64,000 nucleotides of DNA, taken from positions 1 to 64,000 of the IMG/VR virus record IMGVR_UViG_3300032296_003307; one strand, given 5' to 3'. This document shows, in pieces, positions 4,630 through 24,506 of the stretch. The notes beneath the pieces are model-generated. The model was not told the DNA's origin. It was given only the letters and a program-made list of their open reading frames with translations, and did not search any database. Position 1 is the first letter of the stretch; every line of letters starts with the position of its first letter. A program made the translations under genes and the position numbers.

Positions 4630-5391
4630 ATGATTGGACTGATCTCTTTATTAAAAGAAATAGAAGGAACCCCAAAAGCTATTTTTATGGCTGGCCCAGC
4701 AGGATCAGGAAAATCTTATATATCTTCTAAATTAGTCCCCTCAGATTTTACAACAATAAATGTAGATGATACTTATGAGGAATTACTTAAATCCTCAGGT
4801 ATTGGAATGAAATTAGCTCAAATGTCACCTGATGAATTAAAAAAAGCAGGTGAGTTAATGGGTCAAGCAAGAAAAGCTACTGATGTAAAATATCAAGATG
4901 CTCTCAAAGATGCTAAAAATCTTATAATTGATAGTGTAGGAGGTTCTCCTAAAACATTACTTAAGAAAAAACAACAATTAGAGGATTTAGGTTACACTAC
5001 GTTTATGATAATGACTTATGTTTCGCCTATTACCTCACTAGAGCGTAATATGAAGCGAGATAGATCATTGTTACCAAGTATCGTGCTTCGTTCTTGGCGC
5101 GATGTAAATAAAAATATAGACACATATAAGCAAGCTTTTGGAGCCGACTTTGTATTATTGAATTTAGATCCTGATGATGCTAATAAAAACTTTGATGAAG
5201 AATACATTTATCAAACATTTATTAAACCTTTAGGACAAATAGGTAAAGAAAAATCACCTGAGGAAATAGCAAAATCCAAAGCAGAAACCCAACAAATCTA
5301 TTCAGATATAAAACAAACTCTTAATACACAACCTGAGTTTGATACTTTAGAATCAGCCCAACAAAAAATTACTAATTTTATAAACAAATGA
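4630..5391 (+). CDS. P-loop kinase (zeta-toxin/AAA_33/PNK-kinase-like) with leader peptide
   Basis: Walker A GPAGSGKS, INVDD, Walker B LIID, SLERNxxR lid. Leader MIGLISLLKE. Confidence 0.8.
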   Translation: MIGLISLLKEIEGTPKAIFMAGPAGSGKSYISSKLVPSDFTTINVDDTYEELLKSSGIGMKLAQMSPDELKKAGELMGQARKATDVKYQDALKDAKNLIIDSVGGSPKTLLKKKQQLEDLGYTTFMIMTYVSPITSLERNMKRDRSLLPSIVLRSWRDVNKNIDTYKQAFGADFVLLNLDPDDANKNFDEEYIYQTFIKPLGQIGKEKSPEEIAKSKAETQQIYSDIKQTLNTQPEFDTLESAQQKITNFINK

Positions 5392-6065
5392 AGTTATTAA
5401 ATCTTTTATTAAAAATTTATAAAGAAGAATATGATTTGAATCTTAAAGAGGGTTTAATCAAAACTACTAATATTGGTAAAACTATAAACTTACTCAGAGC
5501 ATCTTTTGATTTTGGGTTTGAATATCAAAGAGATGATAATACATTTGAAGTAACCTTTCATCAAATTAATAAAAATATTTTAGATAATTTTTTAAAATAT
5601 GTTAATAATTTAGGTTGGTTTCCTTCTTATATTTCTACTCCAGCATATAAAGGAAAATGGAGAGAAAATACATATGATGATTATTTGTCTAAAATTAGGT
5701 TTGAAGCAAAATTTGATGAAGAAATAGTTGAAAAAATACCCCAAATTCTTTATCATATCACTCCAACTCAAAATGTTAATAAAATTTTAAAAATAGGATT
5801 AGTACCTAAATCAAGATCAAAAGTATCTTATCATCCTGAAAGAATTTATTTAGGAAAATCTATCGGTGGTATAGAAAAATTAGCTCCTCAAATGAATTTA
5901 AGAACTGGAGATAAAAATTTTACAATATTAAAAATCAACACTGATCTAATTCCTGGAGAATATTTAAGATTATATACTGATCCTAATTATAATAAAGAAG
6001 CATTTTACACTTTAAATAACATTCCTCCACAAGCAATAGAAAAAATTAAAGACATACAATTATGA
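5388..6065 (+). CDS. ADP-ribosyltransferase-fold protein (Tpt1/KptA-like)
   Basis: LYHITPTQNVNKILKIGLVPK, RIYL, ILKIN and C-terminal NIPPQAI pattern. Confidence 0.65.
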   Translation: MKLLNLLLKIYKEEYDLNLKEGLIKTTNIGKTINLLRASFDFGFEYQRDDNTFEVTFHQINKNILDNFLKYVNNLGWFPSYISTPAYKGKWRENTYDDYLSKIRFEAKFDEEIVEKIPQILYHITPTQNVNKILKIGLVPKSRSKVSYHPERIYLGKSIGGIEKLAPQMNLRTGDKNFTILKINTDLIPGEYLRLYTDPNYNKEAFYTLNNIPPQAIEKIKDIQL

Positions 6066-6424
6066 AAAAATTAATAGATTTACTTAACGAAATCGAAGAA
6101 AAAGACAACAAAAAAGTTGTTAAAGAAGAACCATCTGTAGTAGATGAGGTAGGAAAATTCTTTGTAGTTAAAAAACCTAAAAAAGGTATGACCAAAGAAG
6201 ATATGGTATATGAAGCTACTGTATTCGATGAAGTAAAAATGGAAGAGGTAAAAGGTGTTTACAAAAACAAATCAGAAGCCAATCGCCACGCCACTGCATC
6301 TTTAATGGAATATGAAAAACAACTTCAGGAAATGGAAGCCGCTGTAGAAGAGTTCCGTGCCATGAAGAAAGATATTGAAGCAAAAAGAAAAGAAGCAGCC
6401 GAAAAAGTTAAAAGTCTTAAATGA
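6062..6424 (+). CDS. Hypothetical protein with leader peptide and C-terminal coiled coil
   Basis: MKKLIDLLNE leader; ATGA overlaps with both neighbours. Confidence 0.7.
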   Translation: MKKLIDLLNEIEEKDNKKVVKEEPSVVDEVGKFFVVKKPKKGMTKEDMVYEATVFDEVKMEEVKGVYKNKSEANRHATASLMEYEKQLQEMEAAVEEFRAMKKDIEAKRKEAAEKVKSLK

Positions 6425-9400
6425 TAGATTCTATCCTAGAGATATTATTTGAGGAAGACTACACAAAAACAGTAGCCATTTATGGTGGTGGTTTTAAACC
6501 ACCTACCAAAGGTCATTTTAATGTTGTTGAAAAAACATTACAAGAATTACCTGATATAGATGAAGCAATTGTTTTTGTTGGTGGAGGAGTTAGAGATGGT
6601 ATTACCCAAGAAGAATCCTTAACCATTTGGAATATCTACAAAAAATATCTTTCAGATAAAGTTACTATAGAACCATCTGTAGCTCCTGTTAAATCAATTT
6701 TAAATTACGCTAAAGAACATCCTGAAGAAAAAGTTTATTGGATTTTAGGTGCTCGTGAAGGTAATGAAGAAGATTTGACAGATATTGCCAACAGAACTAA
6801 ATCAATTGAAAAATATCCTAACATTGAGGTTAAAGTGATTACCTCCTCAGGTGGTGTTAGTGGTACTAAAACAAGAAAAACCTTATTAGACAATAATAAA
6901 GAACAATTTTTCCATCTCATTCCAGATATAGAGGAAAAAGAGGAAATATGGAACATACTTTCTCCAAAGGTTCAAGAATCATTAGAGGAAGGTTTTATAG
7001 AAAATGCACAAGAAAATATGAAAAAGTTGCTTTTAGCCATTAAACAAGAAGGCAGAGAAACAAGAGATGCCTTTAAGTTAGTTTTAAAAGCAGCCAAAGG
7101 TGAAATCCAACTGACAGACGAACAAAAGAAACAAATTGGAGATCAACTAAAAGATGTTTTGAAAATGGTTGGTTTAGTTAGTATTGCTGTTCTTCCTGGT
7201 AGTTTTATTGTTGGAGCTTTAATTAAAATTTTTAAAGCAGAACGTTTAGTATTTCCTTCATCATTGATGAATGAAGACAAACCCTCAGGTGATTCTAATC
7301 CTTTAGGATTAAAATATATTGATATTTGGCATGAGGGTCAATACAAAGCTGAAGAAAATAAAACAGAAGAAGCTATAAAATTAATGATTCAAGCTGCTAA
7401 AGAAGCTGAAGAATTAGAAAGTATTGGAGAAGCAAATTATTATAAAGGAACTATAGCTTGGTTAAAAAAAGATTATAATACTGTTAACAAATACATTAAT
7501 GATAAATTTGTTAAATCAACAGGTAATGATGAAGTATTAAAACGACTTTTAAATAATAAAGATAAATCTTATAAAGAGGCATATAATACTTCTATAAATG
7601 AAGTTGGAGAAGCAAGTGCTAAAGTTTATCCTTTTTCTTCTGATAAAGATCCTAGTGAAATAATAAATTTAGCTAAAAACTTTTTTAGTAAAGGAACCTC
7701 ATCTAAAGTTTATCAACGAGTTTTAACATATACTTTTTCTACAGATAAAGCCGATTACGTTGTTAAATTTAACATAGAGGTAGAACGTCAAACATATGTA
7801 AACTTCTCTAAAAACCCTGATTGGAAACCAGGTCCTCCATATAAAACATATGCTTCTGTTGGTTTCAATATTGAGGGAGAGGAAGAAGATAAAGATACTA
7901 ATTTAAATGAACAGTTTTCTGTTTTATCTACAGTAACAAAAATTATTTTTGATTTTATTGACAAAATAAATGAAGCTGAAGGTAATTTAGTGTCATTAGT
8001 AATTGCTCCTAAAAGTGATACTGGTGAAGAATCATCATTGAATTCTAAACGAGGTAGATTCTACACAGCATACATTCAAAAGAATTTATCCAAATACCCA
8101 GAATATAAAACCAGAGATGGTAAAAATAATTCAGGGGGTGAATATGTAGAAATTTATAAAACAAACAGTGTAAATGAATTAGAAGAAGGTAGAAAAAAGA
8201 AACCTGATCCTAAAAAAGGAACAGGCAAAAAACCTGAAGGATCAGGTCGTAGATTATACACAGATGAAGATCCTAAAGATACTGTTAGTATTAAATTTAA
8301 AACCAAAGAAGATATAGTTGATACTTTAAATAAAAAACAATTTAAAGCTAAATCACATGCTCGTCAATCTCAAATTATTAATTTAATTCATCAACGAGTA
8401 AGAGCCGCTTATGGTAAAGCAAAAGATCCTGAGGTAAAAGCAAGATTAAAACGTGCTTTAGATTATATTGAGTCTCGTAAAGAGGCATCAAAAGAAAAAA
8501 CAGAACGTTTACGTAAAATGAAAGAAGCATCCGACCCACAAGCAGGAACAGCTTTACCTTATGGTTCAGGATTTGCTCCTGTAAAAGAAAGTTACCAATT
8601 TAAAGTTTCCGATAAAAACTATGATGAAGAAGATAATTCTTTAATTTCAGTTGATTATAAATTTTCTACCCCAGATAATGATTATAGAGTTGAATTTTAT
8701 TCAGGTGAATACAATCCTGAAGCTAAAATATTTGATGTTTCTTTTGGAATAGACAAATATGGTTCTAAAATTGATACTTTCCAAATGACAGGTGAAGGTA
8801 ATGCTTTAAGTATTCTTAAAACTATTGTTGATATTATTAAAGATTTTACAAAACGTTTTGAAGTAAATAAGTTAGTTATTGATCCAACAAGCGAAAAACG
8901 TGGAAAAATTTATTCAATGATATTAAAATCATTACCCCCAGACATCTTAAATAAAGTAGAACTTATAAATGAAAATGATTTATTTGGTTTAAATAAATTG
9001 GATAAAGATTTTGTAAAAGAATCCAAAGAATTAAACGTTCAAGATTTAGCTTATAAACAAATACCAGGACTATTAGAAAAAGGAATTAATTATGGATTAG
9101 CCCATTTTAGAGGATTCATGAAATCTTCTTACAAATGGAGTGGTCCAAAGGATAGAAATGATTTTTTTGATTTTATAGAAAATATAAAAGGAGAAATAAA
9201 ACGAGTTCCTTTATCATCTATAAAACCTTCTCAATCAGGTAATGATTACAAAAATTCCTCTTCAGAATATGAAGCAGAAGAATTTCAAAAAATATTAGAT
9301 GGAGAAAAAAATATAGAGGATCATAGGAAAGAAGATTTTTATCCTATATTAGTTAATAAAAGAGATAATAAAATATTAGATGGAAATCATAGACATTATG

Positions 9401-10434
9401 CTTTATCAGCAATAAATTCACCCTATGCTGTAGTATTATATGTAGATGTTCCTAAACAATATATAAATGAAAAATCAGATCCTTTTGGTTTAAATAAATT
9501 TGCAAAAGACTTTGTAAAAGAAGTTTTTGAAGAAACTTGGAATCCCAAAGACTCGTTCGTATCTTTATCCGTATTTATGAAAGACAATGGAATGAACATA
9601 ACCCCATTGCCTAAAATTAAGGTTATATCAGACGACAAAGAAAATGCGTCGCATCTTTTGGGTAAGACTGCTTACTACAATCCAGCAGATAAGTCAATTA
9701 CTCTTTATACCTTTGGAAGGCACCCAAAAGATGTTTTACGCTCTTTTGCTCATGAAATGGTTCACCACGAACAAAATCTTAATGGTACTTTAGGAAATGT
9801 TAGTACTACTAACACAAATGAAGATGGTCATTTAGATAAACTTGAGAGAGAAGCATATGAAAAAGGTAATATCATGTTTAGAAATTGGGAAGATAGTATT
9901 AAGAGTTCAGTAAATGAAATATATTTTTTAGATATTCCTAAATTCAATTATCCTAAAACATTTGTGGATAAATTACGTAAATCCTTAAATGAAATTACTT
10001 TATCAAAAGATAATGCTGTGGAAATAAATGGAGATTTAACTAATGGAAAATTTCAAGTAGGAGATATAATATATGTGTATTCTATAAAAAATATACCAAA
10101 TCCATATAAAGATGAAGGGGAATTTTATAATGTTTCTTTTTATCCTGAAGATAATATAATTTCTGAACCTTTAGAAGGAAAAGAAAATTATGTTAAAATT
10201 TTATCAACAATGTTCAAAATAATATCTGATTTTTCCGAAAAAGAAAAACCAAAATATATAGGAATATCATCTATGGATAACGACAACAATAAAAATTACC
10301 ATAGAGTATATGCCAATTTAACAGATAATAAATTTAACAGAATACCAGGATACTTTAGAAAAGATGTTAGTCTAGGATTTGATACTCCTCAAGGAAAAGG
10401 TAGATTTGTAGTATTAAAAAGAAAAGATGTATAA
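6421..10434 (+). CDS. 1337-aa modular polyprotein: HxGH-type nucleotidyltransferase, several unknown modules, ParB/Srx-like domain, HExxH metallopeptidase
   Basis: GGFKPPTKGHF (6421-6990), ILDGNHR (ParB module 9022-9471), AHEMVHHEQ...EREAY (9535-9918). Modules are separated by LEE/LMNE/SINE/SVNE/MKE/VKE/LINE/YINE/SLNE. Confidence 0.8.
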   Translation: MIDSILEILFEEDYTKTVAIYGGGFKPPTKGHFNVVEKTLQELPDIDEAIVFVGGGVRDGITQEESLTIWNIYKKYLSDKVTIEPSVAPVKSILNYAKEHPEEKVYWILGAREGNEEDLTDIANRTKSIEKYPNIEVKVITSSGGVSGTKTRKTLLDNNKEQFFHLIPDIEEKEEIWNILSPKVQESLEEGFIENAQENMKKLLLAIKQEGRETRDAFKLVLKAAKGEIQLTDEQKKQIGDQLKDVLKMVGLVSIAVLPGSFIVGALIKIFKAERLVFPSSLMNEDKPSGDSNPLGLKYIDIWHEGQYKAEENKTEEAIKLMIQAAKEAEELESIGEANYYKGTIAWLKKDYNTVNKYINDKFVKSTGNDEVLKRLLNNKDKSYKEAYNTSINEVGEASAKVYPFSSDKDPSEIINLAKNFFSKGTSSKVYQRVLTYTFSTDKADYVVKFNIEVERQTYVNFSKNPDWKPGPPYKTYASVGFNIEGEEEDKDTNLNEQFSVLSTVTKIIFDFIDKINEAEGNLVSLVIAPKSDTGEESSLNSKRGRFYTAYIQKNLSKYPEYKTRDGKNNSGGEYVEIYKTNSVNELEEGRKKKPDPKKGTGKKPEGSGRRLYTDEDPKDTVSIKFKTKEDIVDTLNKKQFKAKSHARQSQIINLIHQRVRAAYGKAKDPEVKARLKRALDYIESRKEASKEKTERLRKMKEASDPQAGTALPYGSGFAPVKESYQFKVSDKNYDEEDNSLISVDYKFSTPDNDYRVEFYSGEYNPEAKIFDVSFGIDKYGSKIDTFQMTGEGNALSILKTIVDIIKDFTKRFEVNKLVIDPTSEKRGKIYSMILKSLPPDILNKVELINENDLFGLNKLDKDFVKESKELNVQDLAYKQIPGLLEKGINYGLAHFRGFMKSSYKWSGPKDRNDFFDFIENIKGEIKRVPLSSIKPSQSGNDYKNSSSEYEAEEFQKILDGEKNIEDHRKEDFYPILVNKRDNKILDGNHRHYALSAINSPYAVVLYVDVPKQYINEKSDPFGLNKFAKDFVKEVFEETWNPKDSFVSLSVFMKDNGMNITPLPKIKVISDDKENASHLLGKTAYYNPADKSITLYTFGRHPKDVLRSFAHEMVHHEQNLNGTLGNVSTTNTNEDGHLDKLEREAYEKGNIMFRNWEDSIKSSVNEIYFLDIPKFNYPKTFVDKLRKSLNEITLSKDNAVEINGDLTNGKFQVGDIIYVYSIKNIPNPYKDEGEFYNVSFYPEDNIISEPLEGKENYVKILSTMFKIISDFSEKEKPKYIGISSMDNDNNKNYHRVYANLTDNKFNRIPGYFRKDVSLGFDTPQGKGRFVVLKRKDV

Positions 10435-10975
10435 ACTTAAATTAACAGACATATACAAACAAATTAAAGAAGAGGAAACACAACCTCAATCAGCTCAACA
10501 ATATACAATTTATTGTGATATGGATGGAGTTATTGCTGACTTTGATAAACGATTTAAAGATTTAAATCCTGAACATTTATCTGCTGCCCAATACCAAACA
10601 AAATATGGTATAGAAAAGTTTTGGGATTTTATAGATGAAGAAAATAAAGTAAAATTCTGGGTTGGTATTCCTTGGATGCCTGATGGAAAAGAACTTTGGG
10701 ATTATATTAAAAAATACAAACCAACCTTGTTATCAGCCCCTTCTAAAAAACCACAATCTCGTTTAGGAAAAAGATTATGGGTTAAAAACAATATTCCAGG
10801 AACTCCTTTGATTTTAGCAGCAGCTGATAAAAAACAGAATTATTCTGGAGGAAATAAAATACTTATCGACGACAGAAAAGATAATGTTGACCAATGGCGC
10901 TCACAAGGTGGTATTGGGATAGCACATACCTCTGCTCAAGATACAATTAAACAATTACAAAATTTAGGATTATAA
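10427..10975 (+). CDS. HAD-family 5'(3')-deoxyribonucleotidase-like phosphatase
   Basis: IYCDMDGVIADF (DxD), LLSAP, K..W, ILIDDR motifs. Confidence 0.88.
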   Translation: MYKLKLTDIYKQIKEEETQPQSAQQYTIYCDMDGVIADFDKRFKDLNPEHLSAAQYQTKYGIEKFWDFIDEENKVKFWVGIPWMPDGKELWDYIKKYKPTLLSAPSKKPQSRLGKRLWVKNNIPGTPLILAAADKKQNYSGGNKILIDDRKDNVDQWRSQGGIGIAHTSAQDTIKQLQNLGL

Positions 10976-12179: not shown

Positions 12180-12796
12180 TGGAAATTACAATGATTACAA
12201 CCATTCTTGTTGCTTTAATTACAGCCGTAATTGGTCCCGCTGTTTTAGAATGGGTTAAAGCAAAATTGAGAAAAAATGAAGACAAAGACTCTTCAGTAAA
12301 AGAAGCAATTGATGTCAATGAATTAGTTGACCATCAATTAGATCAATTGTTAGAGGAATTAGGTTGTGATCGAATTTGGGTTGGACAATTTCATAATGGT
12401 GGTCATTTTTATCCTACAGGAAAATCAATCCAGAAATTTTCTATTTTCTACGAAAAATTAACCCCAAGTACCTCAGCAATCCAACATATATTTCAACAAA
12501 TACCTGTTTCATTATTTCCAAAAGCTTTATCTAAGCTTTACAAAGATGGAGAATTGGCTGTTGTAAATTACAATACTGATGAAACTTATGATTTAAGTAT
12601 GTTTTCTAAAGACTATGGAACCAAATCTTTTTATATGTTAGCCATAGATGATTTGGACGAACATTTCATAGGAGTAATGGGAATTGCATTCAATGATAAA
12701 GAACATAAATTATCCAAAGAAGAATGGATATTTATACGACAGAAAGTAGGGGCGATTGGTTCCCTTTTAACAGACTATTTATACAAGAAAAAATGA
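12179..12796 (+). CDS. Putative holin (T4 gpT-like: N-terminal TM + GAF-like domain)
   Basis: Hydrophobic ITMITTILVALITAVIGPAVL, then a GAF-like region (CDRIWVGQFHNGG...FIGVMGIAF). Confidence 0.6.
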   Translation: MEITMITTILVALITAVIGPAVLEWVKAKLRKNEDKDSSVKEAIDVNELVDHQLDQLLEELGCDRIWVGQFHNGGHFYPTGKSIQKFSIFYEKLTPSTSAIQHIFQQIPVSLFPKALSKLYKDGELAVVNYNTDETYDLSMFSKDYGTKSFYMLAIDDLDEHFIGVMGIAFNDKEHKLSKEEWIFIRQKVGAIGSLLTDYLYKKK

Positions 12797-17713: not shown

Positions 17714-18520
17714 ATGGATTTAAAAAAATTAATTAAAGAAGTATTAGAGGATAAAGATTGCTGCAAAGCAAAAAAACCTACTAAAGCGCCTATATTAAAC
17801 GAAAGCTTAGCTCCGCATGAGATATTGTCTGAGGGATTAAAATATCATATAGACAATAAAAAACCGCTTACCGAGCATGTTTACCGTGCTGGTTCAACTA
17901 ATTATTTCCATTTATGGGCTGAAGCCAGAGCACTATATTCTCGTGGTATTCTAGATTTTTCAGGTGATGATTTAGCAATTTTAACTGAAACCCATTTAGG
18001 TGAATTTGGTTACATAACTGAAATAGAAATAGGAGACAAAGTTAAAGCATCTAAAGAATATGGTGGATTATCAGGTGAGGTAGTAGATATTAGAGGTTCT
18101 TTTATTGTTGTTAAAACAAAAGAAGGAAATCAATCATATCATGAATCTGATTTAAAAGTATTAAACAAAGAAGCTAAAAAAGTTCCATTAGATTTTATAA
18201 TGGAAGAACTAGAAGAAGAATTAGACGAAGCTAAATCTAAACCAAAAAAGAAAAATCCCCCAATTGGAAAACCAATGCGTGGTGGTTCTAAAAAGTTTTA
18301 TGTTTATGTAAAAGCACCTGGTGGTAAAATTAAAAAAGTATCATTTGGTCAAGCAGGTATGTCTGCTAAAATTAATAACCCTGAAGCACGTAGAGCATTT
18401 GCTGCTAGACACGATTGTAAAAATAAAAAAGATAGAACAAAAGCATCTTATTGGTCTTGTCGTTTACCTCGTTATGCTAAATTATTAGGATTAAAGTCTA
18501 ATTTTTCAGGATTTTGGTAA
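17714..18520 (+). CDS. Modular hypothetical protein (SH3/KOW-like insert, basic C-terminal module)
   Basis: Leader MDLKKLIKEVLE; IGDKVK...GEVVDIRG; KKVSFG...RRAFAARHDC...YWSC. Confidence 0.7.
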   Translation: MDLKKLIKEVLEDKDCCKAKKPTKAPILNESLAPHEILSEGLKYHIDNKKPLTEHVYRAGSTNYFHLWAEARALYSRGILDFSGDDLAILTETHLGEFGYITEIEIGDKVKASKEYGGLSGEVVDIRGSFIVVKTKEGNQSYHESDLKVLNKEAKKVPLDFIMEELEEELDEAKSKPKKKNPPIGKPMRGGSKKFYVYVKAPGGKIKKVSFGQAGMSAKINNPEARRAFAARHDCKNKKDRTKASYWSCRLPRYAKLLGLKSNFSGFW

Positions 18521-18849
18521 TGATTAAATTTTCAAATATATTAAATGAGGTAAAAAAAGTTAAAGAAACTTTTGAAGAATTTGCTGGAATTAGAGGTAAA
18601 GGTGCTGCTAAAATAGCCGAAAATGCAGAAAAAAAAGGTGGTTTAGCACTTTTAACTTGGCACCATTTTAAGGTGAAAGCTCCCTACTACAAAAAAGCAA
18701 ATGAAGGTAAACTTGATTTAAAAGAAGCCGAAAAAGAATTTAAAGAAACATATAAAAAAATATCCTTAAACATGAGTCAAATCGAATTTCAAAGAGAGGT
18801 TGGTCGTTTAGAGGTTTTAGGTGAGCTTTTAATTAGAAATAAAAAGTGA
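18520..18849 (+). CDS. Hypothetical protein with leader peptide
   Basis: ATG 18520 overlaps the upstream TAA; leader MIKFSNILNE. Confidence 0.7.
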   Translation: MIKFSNILNEVKKVKETFEEFAGIRGKGAAKIAENAEKKGGLALLTWHHFKVKAPYYKKANEGKLDLKEAEKEFKETYKKISLNMSQIEFQREVGRLEVLGELLIRNKK

Positions 18850-19367
18850 TTAAATTATTAGATATATTAAGAGAAGCTAAACAAGCAGGTACTTTATATC
18901 ATTATACAACAATATTATCTTTACTTAAAATACTTGATAGTAATGTTCTAGGTGATGAAAGTCTTGGAAAATACGCTACAGTTTCTCTCACCAGAGATAA
19001 AAATTTTCATAAGAGAACTAGTATAATACCTACTGAATGTTGTATTGTTATAGATGGAGATAAACTTTCAAATAATTATAAGATTGTTCCTTACCAATGG
19101 AATGCAGCACATTTTAGTGGAAAAAAATCCACAGATACTGGAAAAATTGAGGACCAGATGGAAGAAGAAGTACAAGGTTCAATCAAAGGAGTTAGTAAAT
19201 ATATTAAAGAAATTATTATATATGAACTAGAACTTGATCCTTTACCATTTGATGATGATTTTACTTATGAGGCATCTAAAATAATTGATAAACCTAGTGA
19301 TGAAATAACAGCAAATGATATTATTGAATGGATTGAAAAAAAGGGATATAAAGTATCATTAGCATAA
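18846..19367 (+). CDS. Putative ADP-ribosyltransferase-fold protein
   Basis: GTLYHYT...KIL, VSLTR, QMEEEV (H-S-E/ExE pattern). GTG start; leader MIKLLDILRE. Confidence 0.55.
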   Translation: MIKLLDILREAKQAGTLYHYTTILSLLKILDSNVLGDESLGKYATVSLTRDKNFHKRTSIIPTECCIVIDGDKLSNNYKIVPYQWNAAHFSGKKSTDTGKIEDQMEEEVQGSIKGVSKYIKEIIIYELELDPLPFDDDFTYEASKIIDKPSDEITANDIIEWIEKKGYKVSLA

Positions 19368-19378: not shown

Positions 19379-19648
19379 ATGATTAAATTATTAGAAGTAT
19401 TAAACGAATCTCCTCAAAGCAGCTATCCTCCCTACATGTATTCTCCTATTGGGTTTGGATGTCATGTATGTAAATATCATTACATAGAAGAAGGAAAACA
19501 TATGTGTTCCAACAAATACTATCAAGAATACATTTCAGAACAGTTTCCTGATTTAGAGGATCCTGCTGAATTAGTAGATAATGAAGGTAATCCGATTAAA
19601 GATCCTTCAAAATGGTGTTCAAATTGGTTTATGCCTAAAGGTAAATGA
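19379..19648 (+). CDS. Small Cys-rich (Zn-binding) protein with leader peptide
   Basis: CHVC...C...WC; leader MIKLLEVLNE. Confidence 0.7.
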   Translation: MIKLLEVLNESPQSSYPPYMYSPIGFGCHVCKYHYIEEGKHMCSNKYYQEYISEQFPDLEDPAELVDNEGNPIKDPSKWCSNWFMPKGK

Positions 19649-19905
19649 GACCTTACATAGACTTAGAGGTTACAGATTCTTATATTATTCGTGAATTTAG
19701 CGAAAATATAGACCCTATAGAATTACTATGGCATCGTGATGATGAAAACAGAACAGTTGAAATAATTGGTGAAACAGATTGGAAATTACAATTAGATAAT
19801 CAATTACCAACCTCTATAAATCAACCCATATTTATACCAAAACACGAATGGCATCGTGTTATTAAAGGAACAGGAACACTAAAATTAAAAATATACAAAT
19901 CATGA
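19645..19905 (+). CDS. Small cupin-like protein
   Basis: LLWHRD...W..QLDNQLP...IFIPKHEWHRVIK cupin-type pattern. Confidence 0.6.
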   Translation: MRPYIDLEVTDSYIIREFSENIDPIELLWHRDDENRTVEIIGETDWKLQLDNQLPTSINQPIFIPKHEWHRVIKGTGTLKLKIYKS

Positions 19906-20507
19906 TTTTAACAGAAGAGATATTATTACTTCAAAAAAGAGCAGGCATCATTACTGAGGCCGAATACAAACAAAAACTTTCAGAAGTTGATGTTGAAGAT
20001 GAAATGTTTGCTGCAATGAAATCTGTAGCCAATATGATAGATACAGGTGCAGATAAGGTAAAACCTTCAACAAAAGATGGTCAACTACAAGAGGTTGGTG
20101 CTTTAACTTTAGGTGCTTTAGTAACTGGTGCTCCTGGATTACTTTCTGTTTTGGGTAAAGGTGCTAATTTAATAGGAAAAGTATTTGGAAAAAATAAAAA
20201 CAAAGTTGGTGAATTTTTAAAGAAAAAAGGACATCAATTAGAAGAATATTATCTTGAATCAATTGGAGGTTGGCTAAAATCAGCTTATCCTTCAAAATAC
20301 AATGATCAAGATCCTTTAGACAAAACAACTCCTTTATATGATGCTGCCCATAAAATTTATGGATCTCTTTTAATAGGAGCAGCCCTAGTATCAGGATACG
20401 AAGCAGGACAAGCATCAGGAATAGTACAAAAAGGAGTTGAAGGAGGTTTAGCTCTTCTTAAAGGTAAAGAAGTAATTGATATTGCTCAAAAGATAGCTGC
20501 TGCTTAA
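19902..20507 (+). CDS. Hypothetical protein with hydrophobic Gly/Ala helices
   Basis: N-terminal LLQKRAGIITE motif; two hydrophobic segments. Confidence 0.65.
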   Translation: MILTEEILLLQKRAGIITEAEYKQKLSEVDVEDEMFAAMKSVANMIDTGADKVKPSTKDGQLQEVGALTLGALVTGAPGLLSVLGKGANLIGKVFGKNKNKVGEFLKKKGHQLEEYYLESIGGWLKSAYPSKYNDQDPLDKTTPLYDAAHKIYGSLLIGAALVSGYEAGQASGIVQKGVEGGLALLKGKEVIDIAQKIAAA

Positions 20508-20661: not shown

Positions 20662-20668
20662 TTTAATA

Positions 20669-20819: not shown

Positions 20820-21059
20820 ATGAAATACTCAGAATTAAAACAAATTATTAAAGAAGAAATCCAAAAAGTTTTAAAAGAAAATTCTATAAAAAAGGATATT
20901 AATTATGATGAAGAATATCAAAAAATTCGACAAGAAATAATGGATGATTGGGGTTTAGTAGATGATGATATGGATGATGAAGAAAATGAGAATGATGTTA
21001 ACAGGGAGGCTGATGAAATTTTTTATGAAAAATTTGGAATAAACTTTTCAGATTTATAA
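20820..21059 (+). CDS. Small acidic protein with leader peptide
   Basis: MKYSELKQIIKEEIQKVLKE leader. Confidence 0.7.
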   Translation: MKYSELKQIIKEEIQKVLKENSIKKDINYDEEYQKIRQEIMDDWGLVDDDMDDEENENDVNREADEIFYEKFGINFSDL

Positions 21060-21071
21060 ATAATATTTACA

Positions 21072-21204: not shown

Positions 21205-21846
21205 ATGATTAGTATATATATTTTAGAAAAAAATAATATTCCTTTTTATGTAGGAAAATCAAAAGATCCTATAAGAAGAAAACATAGACATAGACAAATA
21301 TATGGAGATGATATTGTTTTTTATGTAATAGATAAAGTAGAAGAAAATAATTGGAAATTCTGGGAATGTTATTGGATAGAACAATTTAGGCAATGGGGAT
21401 TTAATTTAACTAATAAAAACAAGGGTGGAGGAGGGCCTACAAAATGGACAGATATTCAAAAAGAAAATATTAATCCCTCTCGAATTAATGAAATAAAAAA
21501 TAATAAAGATAGAGGAATAAAAATTAGTAAAACTTTAAAAGAAAGAAACCATTCTCAATATTATACACAAGAGGTTAAAAATAAAATTAGCATAAAAAAT
21601 CAAAAACCAAGACCATTTACTAAAAAACACATTGAAAATATGGGTATAGCTAAACGAAAACAAGCCACTCCTGTACTACAGTACGATTTAGAAGGTAATT
21701 TTATTAAAGAATGGGAAAGTAAAGGACAAGCCGCCCTTTGGATAAAAGAACAAACAGGTAAAACAAGTAATTTGGTTTCTCAAATAAAAGATTGTATATT
21801 AGGGAGACAAAAAACCGCTTTTGGATATAAATGGAAATATAAATAA
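21205..21846 (+). CDS. GIY-YIG homing endonuclease with NUMOD-type DNA-binding domains
   Basis: SIYIL...FYVGKS...RR, ECYWI, LTNK..GGGG; C-terminal VLQYDLEGNFIKEWES...AFGYKWKY (NUMOD1-like). Confidence 0.85.
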   Translation: MISIYILEKNNIPFYVGKSKDPIRRKHRHRQIYGDDIVFYVIDKVEENNWKFWECYWIEQFRQWGFNLTNKNKGGGGPTKWTDIQKENINPSRINEIKNNKDRGIKISKTLKERNHSQYYTQEVKNKISIKNQKPRPFTKKHIENMGIAKRKQATPVLQYDLEGNFIKEWESKGQAALWIKEQTGKTSNLVSQIKDCILGRQKTAFGYKWKYK

Positions 21847-21854
21847 TAAATAAT

Positions 21855-23213
21855 ATGGATAAATATAATAAAAAAATTGTAATTGTTGGAAGTGGAGTAG
21901 CGGGAGCTAACGCTGCCACTAAATTAGTAGACAATGGATACCCCGGTCATCTGATAACAATGATTGATATGGGTAATGATCCTTATGAGCGTAAACCTGA
22001 AGAAGTAATGACAGGTTGGCTAGGTAGTGGAGGGTGGAGCGACGGCAAATTAACTTACCATACAGCAATTGGAGGTCAATTATCTAAATATGTTGGTGAA
22101 AAAAAAGCAATGGAATTAATGGATGAAGTCATTAATAACTTCAAACGTTTTCACCCTAAACCAGAGGAAGTACAATGTTCAAATCCAGAGGAAGAACCAG
22201 AATTTATTAAACCATATTTCGGATTAAGACTGTTTCCTGTTTGGCACGTAGGAACTGATTACCTACATGAAATTGGAAAAAATTGGTATGATTATTTAGT
22301 TTCTAAAGGTGTAGAATTTATTTGGAATGAAAGAGTATTTAAAGTTGATTTTGAGTCTCATTTAGTATATCGTACTGTTGATGGAAAAGAAGGTCATTAT
22401 GCTTTAGAATACGACCAACTTATTTTTGGAGTAGGTAAATCAGGTATTGACTTTGCTCAATCAATCCAAGATGAATATCAATTAGAAACAGAACCAAAAT
22501 CAGTTCAAATTGGAGTTAGATTTGAAGCACCACAACACCATTTTCAAAAATTAATTGACATTTCTTATGATTTTAAATTGTATCGTAAATTTGAAGATAA
22601 AGGTGTTTCATTACGTTCGTTCTGTACTAACAACAATGCTGCTTATGTTGCTGTAGAGGAAACTTATGGTGATTTGTCTTATAATGGCCATGCTAAAAAA
22701 GATCCAAAATATAGAAACGATATGACTAATTTTGGTATTTTGATGGAAATCAATGGAATTAATAATCCTTTTGAATGGTCACGTAATGTTGTAAATAAAC
22801 TACAATTTGGAGGTAGAGGTTTGTATTATTCTCCCTCTCGTACTCCTTCTAAAACATCTGAAGGTGAAGAAGTTAATGCTTTCCAAATTGATTTTTTACA
22901 TGGTGTAAAAGAAGTTATGGGTGAATATTGGAATTATATAGAGGATTTTATTGAGGATATGAAAAAAGTATTCCCAACACTTAAAGATGATTGGGGAGTT
23001 TATATTCCTGAGGTAAAATATCTTTCACCTGAACCCCTAGTTTATCCAAGTGATTTAGCTCTAATTGATTACCCAGATGTTCATTTTGTTGGTGATGCTT
23101 TATCAGCAAGAGGAATTACAGTAGCCGGAAGTCAGGGAATATTATCTGTTTCTAAACTAATTAAAAAAGAGGATGCGTGGGATAATATCCATGGTGATAT
23201 AGTTCATTGGTAA
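21855..23213 (+). CDS. FAD-dependent oxidoreductase (auxiliary metabolic gene)
   Basis: IVIVGSGVAG Rossmann motif, GSGGWSDGKL, C-terminal FVGD..ARGI. Confidence 0.88.
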   Translation: MDKYNKKIVIVGSGVAGANAATKLVDNGYPGHLITMIDMGNDPYERKPEEVMTGWLGSGGWSDGKLTYHTAIGGQLSKYVGEKKAMELMDEVINNFKRFHPKPEEVQCSNPEEEPEFIKPYFGLRLFPVWHVGTDYLHEIGKNWYDYLVSKGVEFIWNERVFKVDFESHLVYRTVDGKEGHYALEYDQLIFGVGKSGIDFAQSIQDEYQLETEPKSVQIGVRFEAPQHHFQKLIDISYDFKLYRKFEDKGVSLRSFCTNNNAAYVAVEETYGDLSYNGHAKKDPKYRNDMTNFGILMEINGINNPFEWSRNVVNKLQFGGRGLYYSPSRTPSKTSEGEEVNAFQIDFLHGVKEVMGEYWNYIEDFIEDMKKVFPTLKDDWGVYIPEVKYLSPEPLVYPSDLALIDYPDVHFVGDALSARGITVAGSQGILSVSKLIKKEDAWDNIHGDIVHW

Positions 23214-23215
23214 AA

Positions 23216-23247
23216 TTTGGCTTTTTAAAATAAATTTATTATATTAC
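23216..23247 (+). promoter_or_regulatory. Bacteroidota-type sigma70 promoter (TTTG-N20-TATATTAC)
   Basis: TTTG 23216-19, 20-nt spacer, TATATT 23240-45. Confidence 0.55.
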
Positions 23248-23251
23248 AGTT

Positions 23252-23500
23252 ATGAATACGAAATACGAACCAAGTAAACGACTGAAAAAAGCAGATGGTA
23301 CTATTGCTTATGTTTGGGATGGTAAACTACATAATTGGGAAGGTCCTGCTTTAATTCCTGAAGGCAACGAACGTAAAAGAGAATATTATATTCATGGTAT
23401 TCAATATACTGAAGATGGTTGGAAAGAAGCAAGACGTAATCGTGAGGGATTACCATGGTTTAAAAATCCATCAATTACAAATTCAAGAACAGCTGGTTAA
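23252..23500 (+). CDS. Small protein with LHxxxGPA motif
   Basis: GKLHNWEGPALI...EYYIHG single repeat unit. Confidence 0.7.
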   Translation: MNTKYEPSKRLKKADGTIAYVWDGKLHNWEGPALIPEGNERKREYYIHGIQYTEDGWKEARRNREGLPWFKNPSITNSRTAG

Positions 23501-23502
23501 TT

Positions 23503-24033
23503 ATGAAAATAGGATTATGTGGAACAATGAGTGTAGGTAAAACTACATTAGTAAATGCTTTAAAGCAATTACCTGAATTTGCAGATTATAATTTTGCAAC
23601 TGAACGTTCAAAGTATTTACGTGATTTAGGTATTCCATTGAATACTGATTCGACATTAAAAGGTCAAGTTATATTTTTGGCAGAAAGAGCTGCTGAATTA
23701 ATGAATGAAAATATCATTACTGATAGAACAGTTATTGATGTTATGGCTTTTACTAAAGTAGCTCAATCAATTAATTACTATGAGGCAGAAACTTTTTGTG
23801 ATTTAGCTAAAAATCTACTTCATGAATATGATTATATATTTTATGTATCTCCTGATGGTGTTGAAATGGAAGATAATGGAGTAAGAGAAATTGACTTGAA
23901 ATACAGAGAGCTTATTGATAATATTATTCAATTAAATTTAGAAAAATATAAACTTCGTATTAAAAACCTTGCTGAAATATCAGGAACAACTGAAGAACGG
24001 ATTGAAAAAATTAAAGAGACAATTTTTGGTTGA
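23503..24033 (+). CDS. NadR/AAA_28-type P-loop nucleoside(tide) kinase
   Basis: KIGLCGTMSVGKTTL, TERS, TDRTVID, YDYIFY, EDNGVRE. Confidence 0.8.
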   Translation: MKIGLCGTMSVGKTTLVNALKQLPEFADYNFATERSKYLRDLGIPLNTDSTLKGQVIFLAERAAELMNENIITDRTVIDVMAFTKVAQSINYYEAETFCDLAKNLLHEYDYIFYVSPDGVEMEDNGVREIDLKYRELIDNIIQLNLEKYKLRIKNLAEISGTTEERIEKIKETIFG

Positions 24034-24044
24034 TATTTATAATC

Positions 24045-24506
24045 ATGAGAAAATCTGATTTAAAAAACGAAATCAAAGAATATATCTACGAAATATTATC
24101 TGAAGTAACAATGGTTGGTCCTGATACAGAACTTTCTGATATCCCTTCTATAGCCAAATCAGAAAAAACAAATCCAACAACAGTTAAAGCAGCAATTGAT
24201 CAAGCTAAAAAAACAAAACAAGCAGTTGCTGTAGCTGAATCTGATGATGAAGATAGAGAACCTACCAAAGCAGAATTAGCAAAAGAAAAAGTAAAAACTG
24301 TTTCTAAATTCAAAATCCCAAACTCTGAATTTGAAGATTTTAAAACTAAACTTAAAACTTTAGTTAAGAAAATCAAAGCAATGGAATCAGGTGAAGAAAA
24401 AACCAAAAAGATGGCCGCTTTAAAACAATTCATTAAAAAACCAGAACTGGTTAAAGCATTCAAAGAAAGAGACGTTCAAATTGATACTGACGGATTAGTC
24501 GGTTAA
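24045..24506 (+). CDS. Hypothetical protein with leader peptide
   Basis: ATG 24045 directly after ATATTTATA; MRKSDLKNEIKEYIYEILSE. Confidence 0.7.
   Translation: MRKSDLKNEIKEYIYEILSEVTMVGPDTELSDIPSIAKSEKTNPTTVKAAIDQAKKTKQAVAVAESDDEDREPTKAELAKEKVKTVSKFKIPNSEFEDFKTKLKTLVKKIKAMESGEEKTKKMAALKQFIKKPELVKAFKERDVQIDTDGLVG

What the first reader, a model, noticed from the sequence alone, without database searches (positions are those of the whole stretch)
4630..24506. ~20 kb cluster of genes sharing a capsid-targeting-like leader ending in [ILV]-x-E: a large packaged effector cargo
Seen: unrelated ORFs begin with short amphipathic leaders ending in Glu: MIGLISLLKE (4630), MKLLNLLLKIYKEE (5388), MKKLIDLLNE (6062), MIDSILEILFEE (6421), MYKLKLTDIYKQIKEE (10427), MDLIRLQELVSE (13548), MKKFDLKKMIAE (13859), MDLKKLIKEVLE (17714), MIKFSNILNE (18520), MIKLLDILRE (18846), MIKLLEVLNE (19379), MKYSELKQIIKEE (20820), MRKSDLKNEIKE (24045). 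The capsid (MSQVQQLLE) and scaffold (MANRDLLKE) start the same way, while primase, terminase, sheath and tube do not. Known: T4 internal proteins carry a 10-residue capsid-targeting sequence (IPIII MKTYQEFIAE) removed by gp21, which cuts after Glu in L/I-x-E. Inference: this phage tags over a dozen different enzymes and small proteins for packaging and injection, a much larger cargo set than T4's IPI-III and Alt.
Basis: partly seen in the sequence, partly recalled or inferred. Interest (0 to 1): 0.88.

Follow-up and report, generated by a model that had tools for sequence, protein, structure and literature searches.

The report
Shared capsid-targeting-like leaders on phage genes
In a T4-like phage of flavobacteria, about fourteen unrelated genes next to the head genes begin with the same kind of short leader peptide that phage T4 uses to load proteins into its capsid. 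This suggests, but does not prove, that the phage ships an unusually large kit of enzymes into the host along with its DNA.

Summary
In 4630-24506, 13 of 28 proteins start with an amphipathic leader of the form hydrophobic-x-x-hydrophobic-hydrophobic-x-Glu, with the Glu at residue 8-16. About 0.6 are expected from internal windows and 1.5 from shuffles that keep N-terminal composition. Tail and replication genes score 0 of 31.

The pattern replicates out of sample. In the cultured relative Flavobacterium phage immuto it is 9 of 23 genes before the terminase, against background in the other ~190 genes. In 18 metagenomic relatives it is 57 of 259 upstream of the terminase and 2 of 135 downstream.

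The same rule applied to T4 recovers IPII, IPIII, gp24 and Alt, and the gp23 and gp24 cleavage sites. The phage has a gp21-type protease with its catalytic His and Ser intact.

The leaders sit on unrelated bodies and are more conserved than those bodies. Selection acts on the peptide, because synonymous changes accumulate. AlphaFold does not dock them to the fold in the two proteins modelled.

The T4-style reading (capsid targeting followed by cleavage after Glu) is the best explanation, at about 0.6. No virion proteomics exist, so packaging, cleavage and injection remain inferred.

The parts
4630..5391 (+). Leader MIGLISLLKE on a zeta-toxin/polynucleotide-kinase-like P-loop kinase (253 aa)
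   Evidence: Pfam Zeta_toxin 4.8e-9 and AAA_33, with the domain starting at residue ~17. Foldseek best matches are zeta/PezT and PNK. In the AlphaFold model only residues 1-11 have pLDDT below 50. Leader identity is 96% against 73% for the body, and 8 of the first 10 residues are invariant at 34-37% overall identity.
5388..6065 (+). Leader MKLLNLLLKIYKEE on a 225-aa protein whose body has a Tpt1/KptA-like ADP-ribosyltransferase fold (tentative)
   Evidence: At least 446 homologues exist. All ~118 full-length ones carry MKLLxILLExYKEE. In the AlphaFold model, helix 2-20 is separated from the body by a low-confidence linker at 17-26. Top Foldseek hits are all Tpt1/KptA, then DarT and PARP domains, at E ~2e-4 and TM 0.33-0.42.
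6062..6424 (+). Leader MKKLIDLLNE on a 120-aa protein of unknown function
   Evidence: Leader identity 88% against 62% for the body; Glu10 is invariant.
6421..10434 (+). Leader MIDSILEILFEE on a 1337-aa mosaic protein with an N-terminal nucleotidyltransferase-like domain and DUF6934
   Evidence: TIGR00125 begins at residue 18; DUF6934 at 758-846. Relatives have different leaders, but all keep [IL]-x-E just before TVAIYGGGFKPPT. Domain insertions and deletions are seen against L094. The Mel-JY01 homologue starts MGKLINILLSE.
10427..10975 (+). 15-16-residue leader MYKLKLTDIYKQIKEE on a 5'(3')-deoxyribonucleotidase
   Evidence: phrog_2643 at 1e-24; the NT5C profile starts at residue ~24-28. Glu15 is invariant. 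8 synonymous against 2 non-synonymous changes in 17 codons. Fits the loose motif only.
12793..13548 (+). Possible further leader gene (MKDINKIKEFFSKPLEE); listed ORF start 12724 is probably wrong
   Evidence: Relatives start MKD[IL].KI.EFFSKPL.E. The promoter-like motif lies at 12728. Fits the loose motif only.
13548..13838 (+). Leader MDLIRLQELVSE on a 96-aa basic protein
   Evidence: Refined motif. Glu8 and Glu12 are invariant in the family. phrog_23735, function unknown.
13859..14827 (+). Leader MKKFDLKKMIAE (the 'FDLKK' type) on a 322-aa acidic protein
   Evidence: Refined motif. This leader type recurs on several unrelated bodies in immuto and the metagenomic loci. The Glu is replaced by Lys in some relatives, which then keep L-K-E at residues 6-8. 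The promoter-like motif ends 10 nt upstream.
17714..18520 (+). Leader MDLKKLIKE(VLE) on a 268-aa Cys-rich protein
   Evidence: Refined motif at E9. 9-10 of 16 family members keep it. The promoter-like motif ends 3 nt upstream.
18520..18849 (+). Leader MIKFSNILNE on a 109-aa basic protein
   Evidence: 7 of 8 family members; Glu10 is invariant. The immuto orthologue (78% identical) starts MRLLELLRE.
18846..19367 (+). Leader MIKLLDILRE on a 173-aa protein
   Evidence: Refined motif. Its body recurs as an internal domain (residues 539-622) of the giant protein of L094, preceded there by GGLEE.
19379..19648 (+). Leader MIKLLEVLNE on an 89-aa protein
   Evidence: Refined motif; Glu10 is invariant in 3 family members.
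19902..20507 (+).
   Evidence: The same N-terminal type occurs on other bodies in immuto (25061, 111675) and in the metagenomic loci.
20820..21059 (+). Leader MKYSELKQIIKEE ('MKKSELK' type) on a 79-aa acidic protein
   Evidence: Refined motif. This leader type is found on several unrelated bodies across the clade.
24045..24506 (+). Leader MRKSDLKNEIKE... on a 153-aa protein; the conserved site is at E20 (YEILSE)
   Evidence: 39 of 42 family members fit the loose motif. The refined I-x-x-I-L-x-E ending at E20 is invariant. The promoter-like motif at 24033-24041 ends 3 nt before this ATG, which supports it as the start.
21205..24033 (+). Cluster genes without a leader: GIY-YIG homing endonuclease (21205), FAD oxidoreductase (21855), 23252, and an AAA_28 NadR-type kinase-like gene (23503)
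   Evidence: Pfam. The 21855, 23503 and 23252 families have 0/21, 0/36 and 0/37 refined matches; 21855 and 23503 start directly at beta-strand 1.
25078..26646 (+). Large terminase; its N-terminus MSQDLRQIIREE is a chance match
   Evidence: Terminase_6N. The Glu is variable in the family, 21/58.
26674..28587 (+). T4-type portal (gp20 family), no leader
   Evidence: Portal_T4 3e-68; 0/42.
28622..31268 (+). Small head-module proteins 28622, 29472, 30414 and 30654; three of them carry a conserved N-proximal [ILV]-x-E. Inferred prohead core proteins.
   Evidence: Loose motif in 23/23, 19/21 and 17/23 family members, with no refined matches. No family assignment in Pfam or PHROGs, so the role is inferred from position.
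31270..31872 (+). gp21-type prohead serine protease, the presumed processing enzyme
   Evidence: Peptidase_S77 1.8e-29. 33% identical to T4 gp21, E = 6e-23. His (GELDHP) and Ser (GVSSRG) are retained at the positions changed to Ala in PDB 5jbl. Own refined sites at E7, E171 and E189.
32081..33172 (+). Inferred scaffold protein, N-terminus MANRDLLKE
   Evidence: Lies between the protease and the capsid gene. L-x-E at residue 9 in 16/17 family members; Glu is invariant. No family hit.
33213..34976 (+). Major capsid protein (Gp23 family), N-terminus MSQVQQLLE
   Evidence: Pfam Gp23 1.7e-75. 53% identical to the immuto capsid protein. L7 and E9 are invariant in the family.

Best explanation
The window is the first 64 kb of a T4-like myophage of Flavobacteriia, related to Immutovirus. 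About 14 genes between the primase/exonuclease genes and the terminase encode unrelated proteins that share a short N-terminal amphipathic helix. The helix is usually 9-13 residues and up to about 20. It has hydrophobic residues at P7, P4 and P3 and Glu at P1.

The most likely mechanism is the T4 one. During prohead assembly the leader docks its protein to the scaffold core. The gp21-type protease (31270) then cuts after the Glu and releases the mature protein inside the head. The protein later leaves the head with the DNA.

Shown: the motif itself, its confinement to this block, its conservation, its portability, its detachment from the fold, its match to the T4 determinants, and an apparently active-site-intact protease.

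Inferred: targeting, cleavage, virion residence and ejection.

The putative cargo includes a zeta/PNK-like kinase, a Tpt1-like ADP-ribosyltransferase-fold protein, a 1337-aa mosaic protein with a nucleotidyltransferase domain, a deoxyribonucleotidase, and about ten proteins of unknown function.
For: - Enrichment: 13/28 against 0.57 expected, with 0/31 in tail and replication genes. Within-N-terminus shuffles give 1.5, maximum 6.
- Replication out of sample: immuto pre-terminase block 9/23 against 8/193 elsewhere (Fisher p = 5e-6). In 18 IMG/VR loci, 57/259 upstream of TerL against 2/135 downstream.
- T4 control: the same rule hits ipII, ipIII, gene 24 and alt (11/142 genes overall), and lands on the known gp23 E65 and gp24 E10 sites.
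- Matching positions: P7, P4, P3 and P1 are residues 4, 7, 8 and 10 of a 10-mer. In T4 IPIII these are the targeting (4, 7) and processing (8, 10) determinants, and gp21 cuts after L/I-x-E (PMC9026906).
- Two classes of substrate: capsid, scaffold and small head proteins, which assemble on their own, have only [ILV]-x-E. Only the cluster proteins add hydrophobic P7 and P4.
- Portability: the leader-bearing proteins are not paralogues, and four leader types recur on at least 20 body families.
- Conservation: the P1 Glu is invariant within the aligned families 4630, 6062, 10427, 13548, 18520, 19379, capsid and scaffold (exceptions are listed under evidence against). The 4630 leader is 96% identical against 73% for the body.
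- Peptide-level selection: synonymous changes accumulate in leader codons.
- Add-on position: leaders sit 5-12 residues ahead of beta-strand 1 of the kinase, nucleotidyltransferase and HAD folds, whereas neighbours 21855 and 23503 start at beta-strand 1.
- Structure: in the kinase model only residues 1-11 are low-confidence. 5388 has a detached N-terminal helix.
- Protease: S77 family with catalytic His and Ser retained.
- Expression: a promoter-like motif shared with portal, head and tail genes precedes eight genes in 12.7-24.1 kb, and a one-mismatch variant is conserved upstream of the 4630 family.
Against: - There is no virion proteome or N-terminal sequencing for this clade, so packaging and cleavage are unobserved.
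- In T4, 7 of the 11 genes hit by the rule are not known processed head proteins, so a match alone is weak evidence for any single gene.
- The Glu is not invariant in every family. Some 13859 relatives have IAKN; the E12 of the 24045 family is kept in ~60%; the 17714 family keeps the motif in ~56%.
- Several candidates are nucleotide or NAD-type enzymes that would also be useful in the cytoplasm.
- In immuto the promoter-like motif does not precede the leader genes.
- The first half of the cluster has no exact copy of that motif.
- The apparent scaffold similarity of cluster proteins disappeared after composition correction.
- AlphaFold low confidence is compatible with, but does not prove, a free peptide.
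Confidence: 0.6

Rival explanations
1. The leader is a shared docking helix for some partner other than the prohead core and is not cleaved. Candidate partners are the membrane, a phage-encoded hub or chaperone, or an infection-specific compartment. It marks a co-regulated set of cytoplasmic takeover proteins.
For: The helix is strongly amphipathic, with a hydrophobic moment of 0.52 against 0.30. It is conserved but undocked, which fits any peptide-protein interaction. Many candidates are metabolic enzymes. Immuto encodes its own GroEL/GroES.
Against: This does not explain the invariant Glu at the end of the helix. It does not explain the match to the T4 processing positions, the recovery of T4 substrates by the same rule, or the location next to a T4-type head module with an S77 protease. 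The leaders are too short and too acidic for typical membrane-targeting helices (inference).
Confidence: 0.2
2. The leaders are short propeptides or regulatory tags recognised by a protease, phage or host, for timed activation or turnover of potentially toxic enzymes such as the zeta-like kinase and the ART-fold protein. No capsid delivery is involved.
For: Two candidates have toxin-like folds. The P1 Glu and P3 hydrophobic residue fit a protease site.
Against: In T4, gp21 carries out its cleavages within the assembling prohead (PMC9026906), so by analogy cleavage by the S77 protease would imply presence in the prohead. No other phage protease was seen in the window. The additional P7 and P4 hydrophobic positions are not needed for cleavage in T4.
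Confidence: 0.07
3. The pattern is a by-product of base composition or of nucleotide-level constraints at gene starts. Possible causes are AT-rich codons, translation initiation without Shine-Dalgarno sequences, or recombination cassettes.
For: GC is ~30% and K, I, L and E codons are favoured. There are no Shine-Dalgarno sequences upstream.
Against: The other ~190 immuto genes and 31 window genes of the same composition sit at background. Composition-preserving shuffles give 1.5 against 13 observed. Synonymous changes accumulate in the leaders and the upstream DNA is not conserved.
Confidence: 0.02

Closest known systems
Phage T4 capsid targeting sequence (CTS) of internal proteins IPI, IPII and IPIII, and the N-terminal propeptides of Alt and gp24, removed by prohead protease gp21
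   Same: A roughly 10-residue N-terminal leader on otherwise unrelated proteins. Hydrophobic residues at positions 4, 7 and 8 and Glu at position 10. L/I-x-E before the presumed cut. An S77 protease with catalytic His and Ser. Gp23-type capsid and gp20-type portal. The same regular expression finds both sets.
   Different: About 14 candidates in 20 kb here, against 4 known processed head proteins among 142 T4 genes hit by the same rule. Many candidates are enzymes or large proteins (up to 1337 aa) with mixed pI of 4.1-10.3, unlike the small basic IPs. Leaders come in at least four sequence types and lengths of 9-20 residues. The host phylum is Bacteroidota. Nothing has been shown experimentally.
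Polymorphic internal-protein loci of T-even phages (diverse proteins sharing only a CTS; PMC3012670, PMC9026906)
   Same: A variable set of unrelated bodies that share only the leader. Gene content differs between close relatives: 5388 is absent from L094, and giant-protein domains are gained and lost.
   Different: Far larger and spread over a 20-kb block; includes recognisable enzymes; found in an uncultured marine and freshwater clade.
Propeptide-bearing head and ejection proteins of giant phages phiKZ, 201phi2-1 and SPN3US, cut by gp21-like proteases (PMC9026906, PMC5694885, PMC7411985)
   Same: Many head-internal proteins processed after Glu by a diverged gp21 homologue; large ejected protein cargo.
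   Different: There the motif is S/A-x-E (from my own recollection the propeptides there are often long). Here it is L/I-x-E with short T4-like leaders, and the protease is much closer to T4 gp21 (33% identity).
Encapsulin cargo-loading peptides (analogy in function only; from general knowledge, not tested here)
   Same: A short terminal peptide shared by unrelated enzymes directs them into an HK97-fold shell.
   Different: These are usually C-terminal, are not cleaved, and act in a bacterial compartment and not in a virion.

Membership tests
T4-type CTS / gp21-processed head-internal proteins | The phage encodes a gp21-family (Peptidase_S77) prohead protease with catalytic His and Ser, within a T4-type head module | tested here: met
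   Peptidase_S77 1.8e-29. 33% identity to T4 gp21. His and Ser retained at the positions changed to Ala in 5jbl. Portal_T4 and Gp23 families present.
T4-type CTS / gp21-processed head-internal proteins | Short (~10-residue) N-terminal leader ending in L/I-x-E | tested here: met
   13 listed N-termini verified. Across the clade, leader lengths peak at 10 and 12 residues. P3 is L or I in 89% and P1 is Glu by definition of the rule.
T4-type CTS / gp21-processed head-internal proteins | Determinants at residues 4 and 7 (targeting) and 8 and 10 (processing) of the 10-mer | tested here: met
   Hydrophobic P7 (L or I in 87%), P4 and P3, plus Glu at P1: 13/28 against 0.57 expected. The same rule recovers T4 ipII, ipIII, gp24 and alt (criteria from PMC9026906). 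This is a test of sequence pattern only.
T4-type CTS / gp21-processed head-internal proteins | The leader is the only element shared by otherwise unrelated proteins | tested here: met
   No BLAST similarity among the leader-bearing bodies in the window. At least 20 body families across the clade.
T4-type CTS / gp21-processed head-internal proteins | The leader is removed by the prohead protease during maturation | not testable with these tools
   Needs N-terminal sequencing or mass spectrometry of virions, or an in-vitro cleavage assay.
T4-type CTS / gp21-processed head-internal proteins | The mature protein resides in the head and is ejected with the DNA | not testable with these tools
   No virion proteome found for immuto or its relatives.
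T4 internal proteins IPI/IPII/IPIII (as a protein family) | Small basic DNA-associated proteins, or sequence similarity to known IPs | tested here: not met
   No Pfam or PHROG hit to internal virion proteins. Putative mature sizes are 8-152 kDa and pI 4.1-10.3. These are therefore not IP homologues; only the leader mechanism is comparable.
Zeta/PezT-type toxin kinases (for gene 4630) | P-loop kinase fold of the zeta type; UDP-GlcNAc kinase activity; cognate antitoxin | tested here: inconclusive
   Pfam Zeta_toxin 4.8e-9. Foldseek 3q8x, 1gvn and 2p5t at E 2.5e-7 to 6e-6, but TM only ~0.5, with polynucleotide kinases scoring similarly. Substrate and antitoxin were not assessed.
Tpt1/KptA RNA 2'-phosphotransferase (ART fold) (for gene 5388) | NAD-dependent ART fold with the Tpt1 catalytic Arg/His residues | tested here: inconclusive
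   The top 18 Foldseek hits are all Tpt1/KptA (E 2e-4 to 9e-3), but TM is only 0.31-0.43. The sequence hit has E = 0.26. Invariant H123, R143, H149 and R152 exist in the family alignment but were not mapped onto the catalytic residues.

The most novel reading that the evidence does not exclude
A widespread clade of flavobacterial T4-like phages (at least 599 terminase relatives in IMG/VR) uses a small vocabulary of CTS-type address peptides to load a large, rapidly changing arsenal into the capsid. The window has about 14 such proteins, and the clade has at least 20 and possibly around 50 body families. The arsenal would include pre-made enzymes: a zeta-like kinase, a Tpt1-like ADP-ribosyltransferase-fold protein, a mosaic 150-kDa nucleotidyltransferase protein possibly processed like a polyprotein, and a deoxyribonucleotidase. 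These would be injected with the DNA to reprogramme host nucleotide and NAD metabolism or to counter defences before any phage gene is expressed.
Probability: 0.4. Interest if true: 0.82.

Novelty: new variant of a known kind. Interest (0 to 1): 0.68.

Why it matters
If the leaders work as in T4, capsid delivery of proteins is not limited to the few known T-even cases. It would be a major, expandable strategy in abundant aquatic phages of Bacteroidota. It would carry enzymes as well as small inhibitors.

That would change how 'early' functions are assigned in metagenomic phage genomes. It would give a sequence rule for predicting injected proteins: hydrophobic P7, P4 and P3 with Glu at P1, at the N-terminus, in phages that have an S77 protease. 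It would also provide natural targeting tags for loading foreign proteins into non-coliphage capsids.

The hypothesis can be tested directly, because a cultured relative (immuto on Flavobacterium sp. LMO8) carries the same leaders.

Tried and rejected
- **Composition artefact.** Rejected by the genome-internal controls and by composition-preserving shuffles.
- **DNA-level cassette or translation-initiation element.** Rejected: the upstream DNA is not conserved and synonymous changes accumulate in leader codons.
- **Paralogy among leader proteins.** None found.
- **Scaffold paralogues inside the cluster (13859, 15081, 6062, 12724).** The hits seen without composition correction collapse to E = 0.02 for 15081 and nothing for 13859 with adjusted BLASTP. 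6062 and 12724 were not re-tested.
- **Late-promoter co-regulation as a general argument.** ATATTTATA marks structural genes in both phages, but in immuto it does not precede the leader genes. It is kept only as supporting evidence for this window.
- **Near-identical DNA in cultured phages.** None.
- **Functional assignment of ORFan cargo by sequence.** Pfam, PHROGs, NCBIfam and PDB sequence searches gave nothing for most of them.
- **Literature search for CTS-type leaders outside T-even phages, or a virion proteome of this clade.** Nothing found.
- **Polyprotein idea for the giant protein.** The only support is one L-E-E junction before the internal 18846-like domain in L094. This is too weak to claim.
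- **A single-linkage component joining eight window bodies through multidomain giants.** Not interpreted, because low-complexity links cannot be excluded.

Full report
**What the window is.** All long ORFs lie on the + strand. GC is about 30% and no Shine-Dalgarno sequences precede the starts. The window is the first 64 kb of IMG/VR contig IMGVR_UViG_3300032296_003307, which is 268,739 bp. It has no near-identical DNA in cultured phages. Its capsid protein is 53% identical to that of Flavobacterium phage vB_FspM_immuto (160 kb), then 47% to Microcystis phage Mel-JY01 and 34% to Rhodothermus phage RM378. Gene order matches immuto: primase, exonuclease, a variable block, terminase, T4-type portal, small head proteins, prohead protease, scaffold, Gp23-type capsid protein, then neck, tail and baseplate genes.

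**Checking the observation.** By this rule 15 of 28 proteins in the block match, against 15% of internal windows of the same proteins (p = 3e-6). Outside the block 12 of 45 match against 11%, and most of those are head-module proteins.

Aligning the leaders on the Glu gave a tighter rule: hydrophobic residues at P7, P4 and P3 with Glu at P1. By this rule 13 of 28 match (0.57 expected, p = 3e-15). Only 1 of 13 matches in the terminase-to-head block, and none of 31 tail and replication genes match. Shuffling residues 2-18 within each N-terminus keeps the local composition and gives a mean of 1.5 and at most 6 hits in 5000 trials. The leaders are also markedly amphipathic, with a hydrophobic moment of 0.52 against 0.30 for other N-termini.

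**Out-of-sample replication.** The refined rule was derived on the window, so I tested it elsewhere.
- In the complete immuto genome, 9 of 23 genes in the 100-119 kb pre-terminase block match (0.36 expected). Only 8 of 193 genes in the rest of the genome match (4.5 expected; Fisher p = 5e-6).
- With the loose rule, immuto's 100-130 kb region has 20 of 34 matches, while the other 194 genes sit at background.
- In 18 IMG/VR loci anchored on the terminase (78-93% identical, from at least 599 relatives), 57 of 259 upstream genes match against 5.7 expected. Only 2 of 135 downstream genes match.

The motif is therefore a property of this gene block in this phage clade. It is not a property of AT-rich N-termini in general.

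**Positive control in T4.** I ran the identical procedure on T4 positions 50-140 kb, which holds 142 genes. It gave 11 hits against 2.8 expected. Four of them are ipII, ipIII, gene 24 and alt, the classic N-terminally processed head proteins. The rule also lands on the known gp23 site at E65 and the gp24 site at E10. IPI shows only the loose motif, at E19.

According to the T4 literature, gp21 cuts after Glu in L/I-x-E. The first ten residues of IPIII are sufficient for encapsidation. Residues 4 and 7 carry the targeting and residues 8 and 10 carry the processing (PMC9026906). These are the same positions as P7, P4, P3 and P1.

The same literature says that T-even internal proteins are a diverse set sharing only the CTS (PMC3012670; PMC9026906).

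**Anatomy and conservation of the leaders.**
- *Portability.* The leader-bearing proteins are not paralogues. Across the clade at least 20 multi-member body families, plus about 30 singletons, carry the motif. The leaders fall into four recurring types: MIKLLDILxE, MKKSELKxxIKEE, MxNFDLKKYLAENKL and ...QKLAGIITE. The last type adds window gene 19902 to the list.
- *Family-specific presence.* 18520 has it in 7 of 8 members, 24045 in 39 of 42, and 5388 in about 92% of 118. By contrast 21855, 23503, 19645 and the portal have none.
- *Conservation.* The candidate P1 Glu is invariant in the 4630, 6062, 10427, 13548, 18520, 19379, capsid and scaffold families. In the 4630 family the body falls to 31-36% identity while the leader stays MIGL[IV]SLL[KI]E. 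Eight of its first ten residues are invariant.
- *Level of selection.* Leader codons accumulate synonymous substitutions, for example 8 synonymous against 2 non-synonymous in 17 codons of the 10427 family. The upstream DNA diverges. Selection therefore acts on the peptide.
- *Add-on position.* Family profiles start at residue ~17-18 in the kinase and the nucleotidyltransferase and at ~24-28 in the deoxyribonucleotidase. Neighbours 21855 and 23503 start directly at the first beta-strand.
- *Structure.* The 4630 model has mean pLDDT 86.7, and its only low-confidence segment is residues 1-11. The 5388 model has an N-terminal helix separated from the body by a low-confidence linker.

**A distinction that favours targeting.** The capsid (MSQVQQLLE), the scaffold (MANRDLLKE) and the conserved small head proteins 29472 and 30654 keep an N-proximal [ILV]-x-E. 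They do not have the upstream hydrophobic P7 and P4 positions. These proteins should enter the prohead through their own assembly interactions. The extra positions appear only on the block's proteins, which would need an address. They coincide with the T4 targeting residues.

**The protease.** Gene 31270 belongs to Peptidase_S77 (1.8e-29) and is 33% identical to T4 gp21. It retains the His (GELDHP) and Ser (GVSSRG) at the two positions that differ between wild-type gp21 and the crystallised form 5jbl. It also has motif matches at E7, E171 and E189, which recalls the terminal processing discussed for gp21.

**What the candidates are.**
- 4630 is a zeta/PezT-like or polynucleotide-kinase-like P-loop kinase.
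- 5388 has a body whose best structural matches are all Tpt1/KptA, followed by other ADP-ribosyltransferase-fold proteins. TM-scores are low, so this is tentative. It would parallel T4 Alt, a packaged ADP-ribosyltransferase.
- 6421 is a 1337-aa mosaic protein with an N-terminal nucleotidyltransferase-like domain and DUF6934. Relatives differ by whole-domain insertions and deletions, and one relative contains the body of 18846 as an internal domain.
- 10427 is a 5'(3')-deoxyribonucleotidase.
- The rest have no recognisable family.
- One copy of each putative mature protein totals about 390 kDa. That is small compared with the ~1000 internal protein molecules in a T4 head.

**Expression hint.** ATATTTATA occurs 22 times against 4.3 expected, with 21 copies on the + strand. 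It lies 3-27 nt upstream of the portal, head, neck, tail and baseplate genes. It also precedes eight positions in 12.7-24.1 kb, including 13859, 17714 and 24045. A one-mismatch variant is conserved upstream of the 4630 family. This fits late co-expression with virion genes. In immuto, however, the motif does not precede the leader genes, so this is only supporting evidence.

**Weaknesses.**
- Nothing shows that any of these proteins is in a virion or is cleaved.
- In T4 more than half of the rule's hits are not known head proteins.
- The Glu is lost in some family members.
- Several candidates are enzymes that would be expected to act in the cytoplasm.
Its Glu alternates with Gln across the family.
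- The apparent similarity of some block proteins to the scaffold was a composition artefact.

**Verdict.** The T4-type capsid-targeting and cleavage mechanism is the best-supported explanation, with confidence about 0.6. The main rival is a non-cleaved docking helix for another partner (about 0.2). The system is not homologous to the T4 internal proteins themselves; only the leader mechanism and the head machinery are shared. I rate it a new variant of a known kind: a much larger, enzyme-rich and fast-evolving putative cargo in a widespread clade of Bacteroidota phages. It is directly testable in the cultured relative.

Mel-JY01, a more distant relative, has the leader on its nucleotidyltransferase homologue. 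Only about 3-4 of its genes near the head module carry the motif. The expansion therefore appears specific to the flavobacterial clade.

Noticed in passing
window 12728, 13840, 17702, 19828, 20544, 20750, 21186, 24033, 26646, 28598, 30641, 35053, 37470, 43584, 47905, 48954, 49400, 52194, 52773, 56434, 63047: ATATTTATA occurs 22 times against 4.3 expected, with 21 copies on the + strand, almost always just upstream of an ATG. At 17714, 24045, 30654 and 43597 only 3-4 nt separate it from the start codon, which would imply leaderless or nearly leaderless late mRNAs if it is a -10-like promoter element. There are no copies before 12.7 kb.
   Followed up: partly
window 1-64000 (IMGVR_UViG_3300032296_003307): The source contig is 268,739 bp, whereas immuto is 160 kb and related IMG/VR contigs are 136-170 kb. 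Either this is a jumbo member of the clade or the assembly is a concatemer or chimera. The rest of the contig could not be read.
   Followed up: no
window 21205-23213; L027 5436-7766: A GIY-YIG/NUMOD1 homing endonuclease lies immediately upstream of the FAD oxidoreductase gene. In relative L027 the oxidoreductase reading frame is split into two ORFs (173 and 259 aa). A homing-endonuclease-like ORF and a further small ORF lie between them. This suggests mobile-element invasion of that gene.
   Followed up: no
window 35089-37449: Three auxiliary-looking genes lie between the capsid gene and the neck genes: an amidinotransferase/DDAH-like protein (7e-6), a phosphatidylserine-decarboxylase-like protein (2.6e-24) and PhoH (5e-64).
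   Followed up: no
window 46371-48951: Three tandem paralogues (46371, 47175, 48214; 34-40% identical) share a GLVLxLDAAN segment near the N-terminus. They sit within the tail-fibre region and are probably diversified receptor-binding or fibre-associated proteins.
   Followed up: no
window 4630-5391 (alignment A1, C-terminus): In the 4630 kinase family the C-terminal ~13 residues (E.AQQKITNFINK) stay conserved even in members that are only 34-37% identical overall. This could be a second terminal signal, as T4 Alt is processed at both ends.
   Followed up: no
window 6421-10434 and 18846-19367; L094 3660-7088: The giant protein is a mosaic. Window segments 286-391 and 724-1014 are absent from L094, and L094 residues 479-677 are absent from the window. 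That L094 insert contains a copy of the 18846 body, preceded by GGLEE. This indicates gene fusion and fission among the leader-bearing genes, and possibly polyprotein-like processing.
   Followed up: partly
window 31270-31872: The protease has refined-motif matches at E7 (MKQVLIE, conserved across the clade), E171 and E189. These are possible self-processing sites at both ends, as discussed for T4 gp21.
   Followed up: no
window 19645-19905 and 20609-20809: 20609 is a TTG-initiated 66-aa ORF that is 44% identical to the C-terminal half of 19645. It is probably a decayed partial duplicate.
   Followed up: no
window 12724-13548: The longest ORF starts at 12724 and overlaps the preceding gene by 73 nt. 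Homologues begin at the equivalent of 12793 (MKDINKIKEFF...), so the real start is probably 12793.
   Followed up: partly
window 23503-24033 with 6421-10434: An AAA_28 NadR-type kinase-like protein and a nucleotidyltransferase-like domain are encoded in the same block, and immuto annotates its homologue as NadR/NMN adenylyltransferase. Together they hint at phage-encoded NAD salvage. The profile matches for the window proteins are weak.
   Followed up: no
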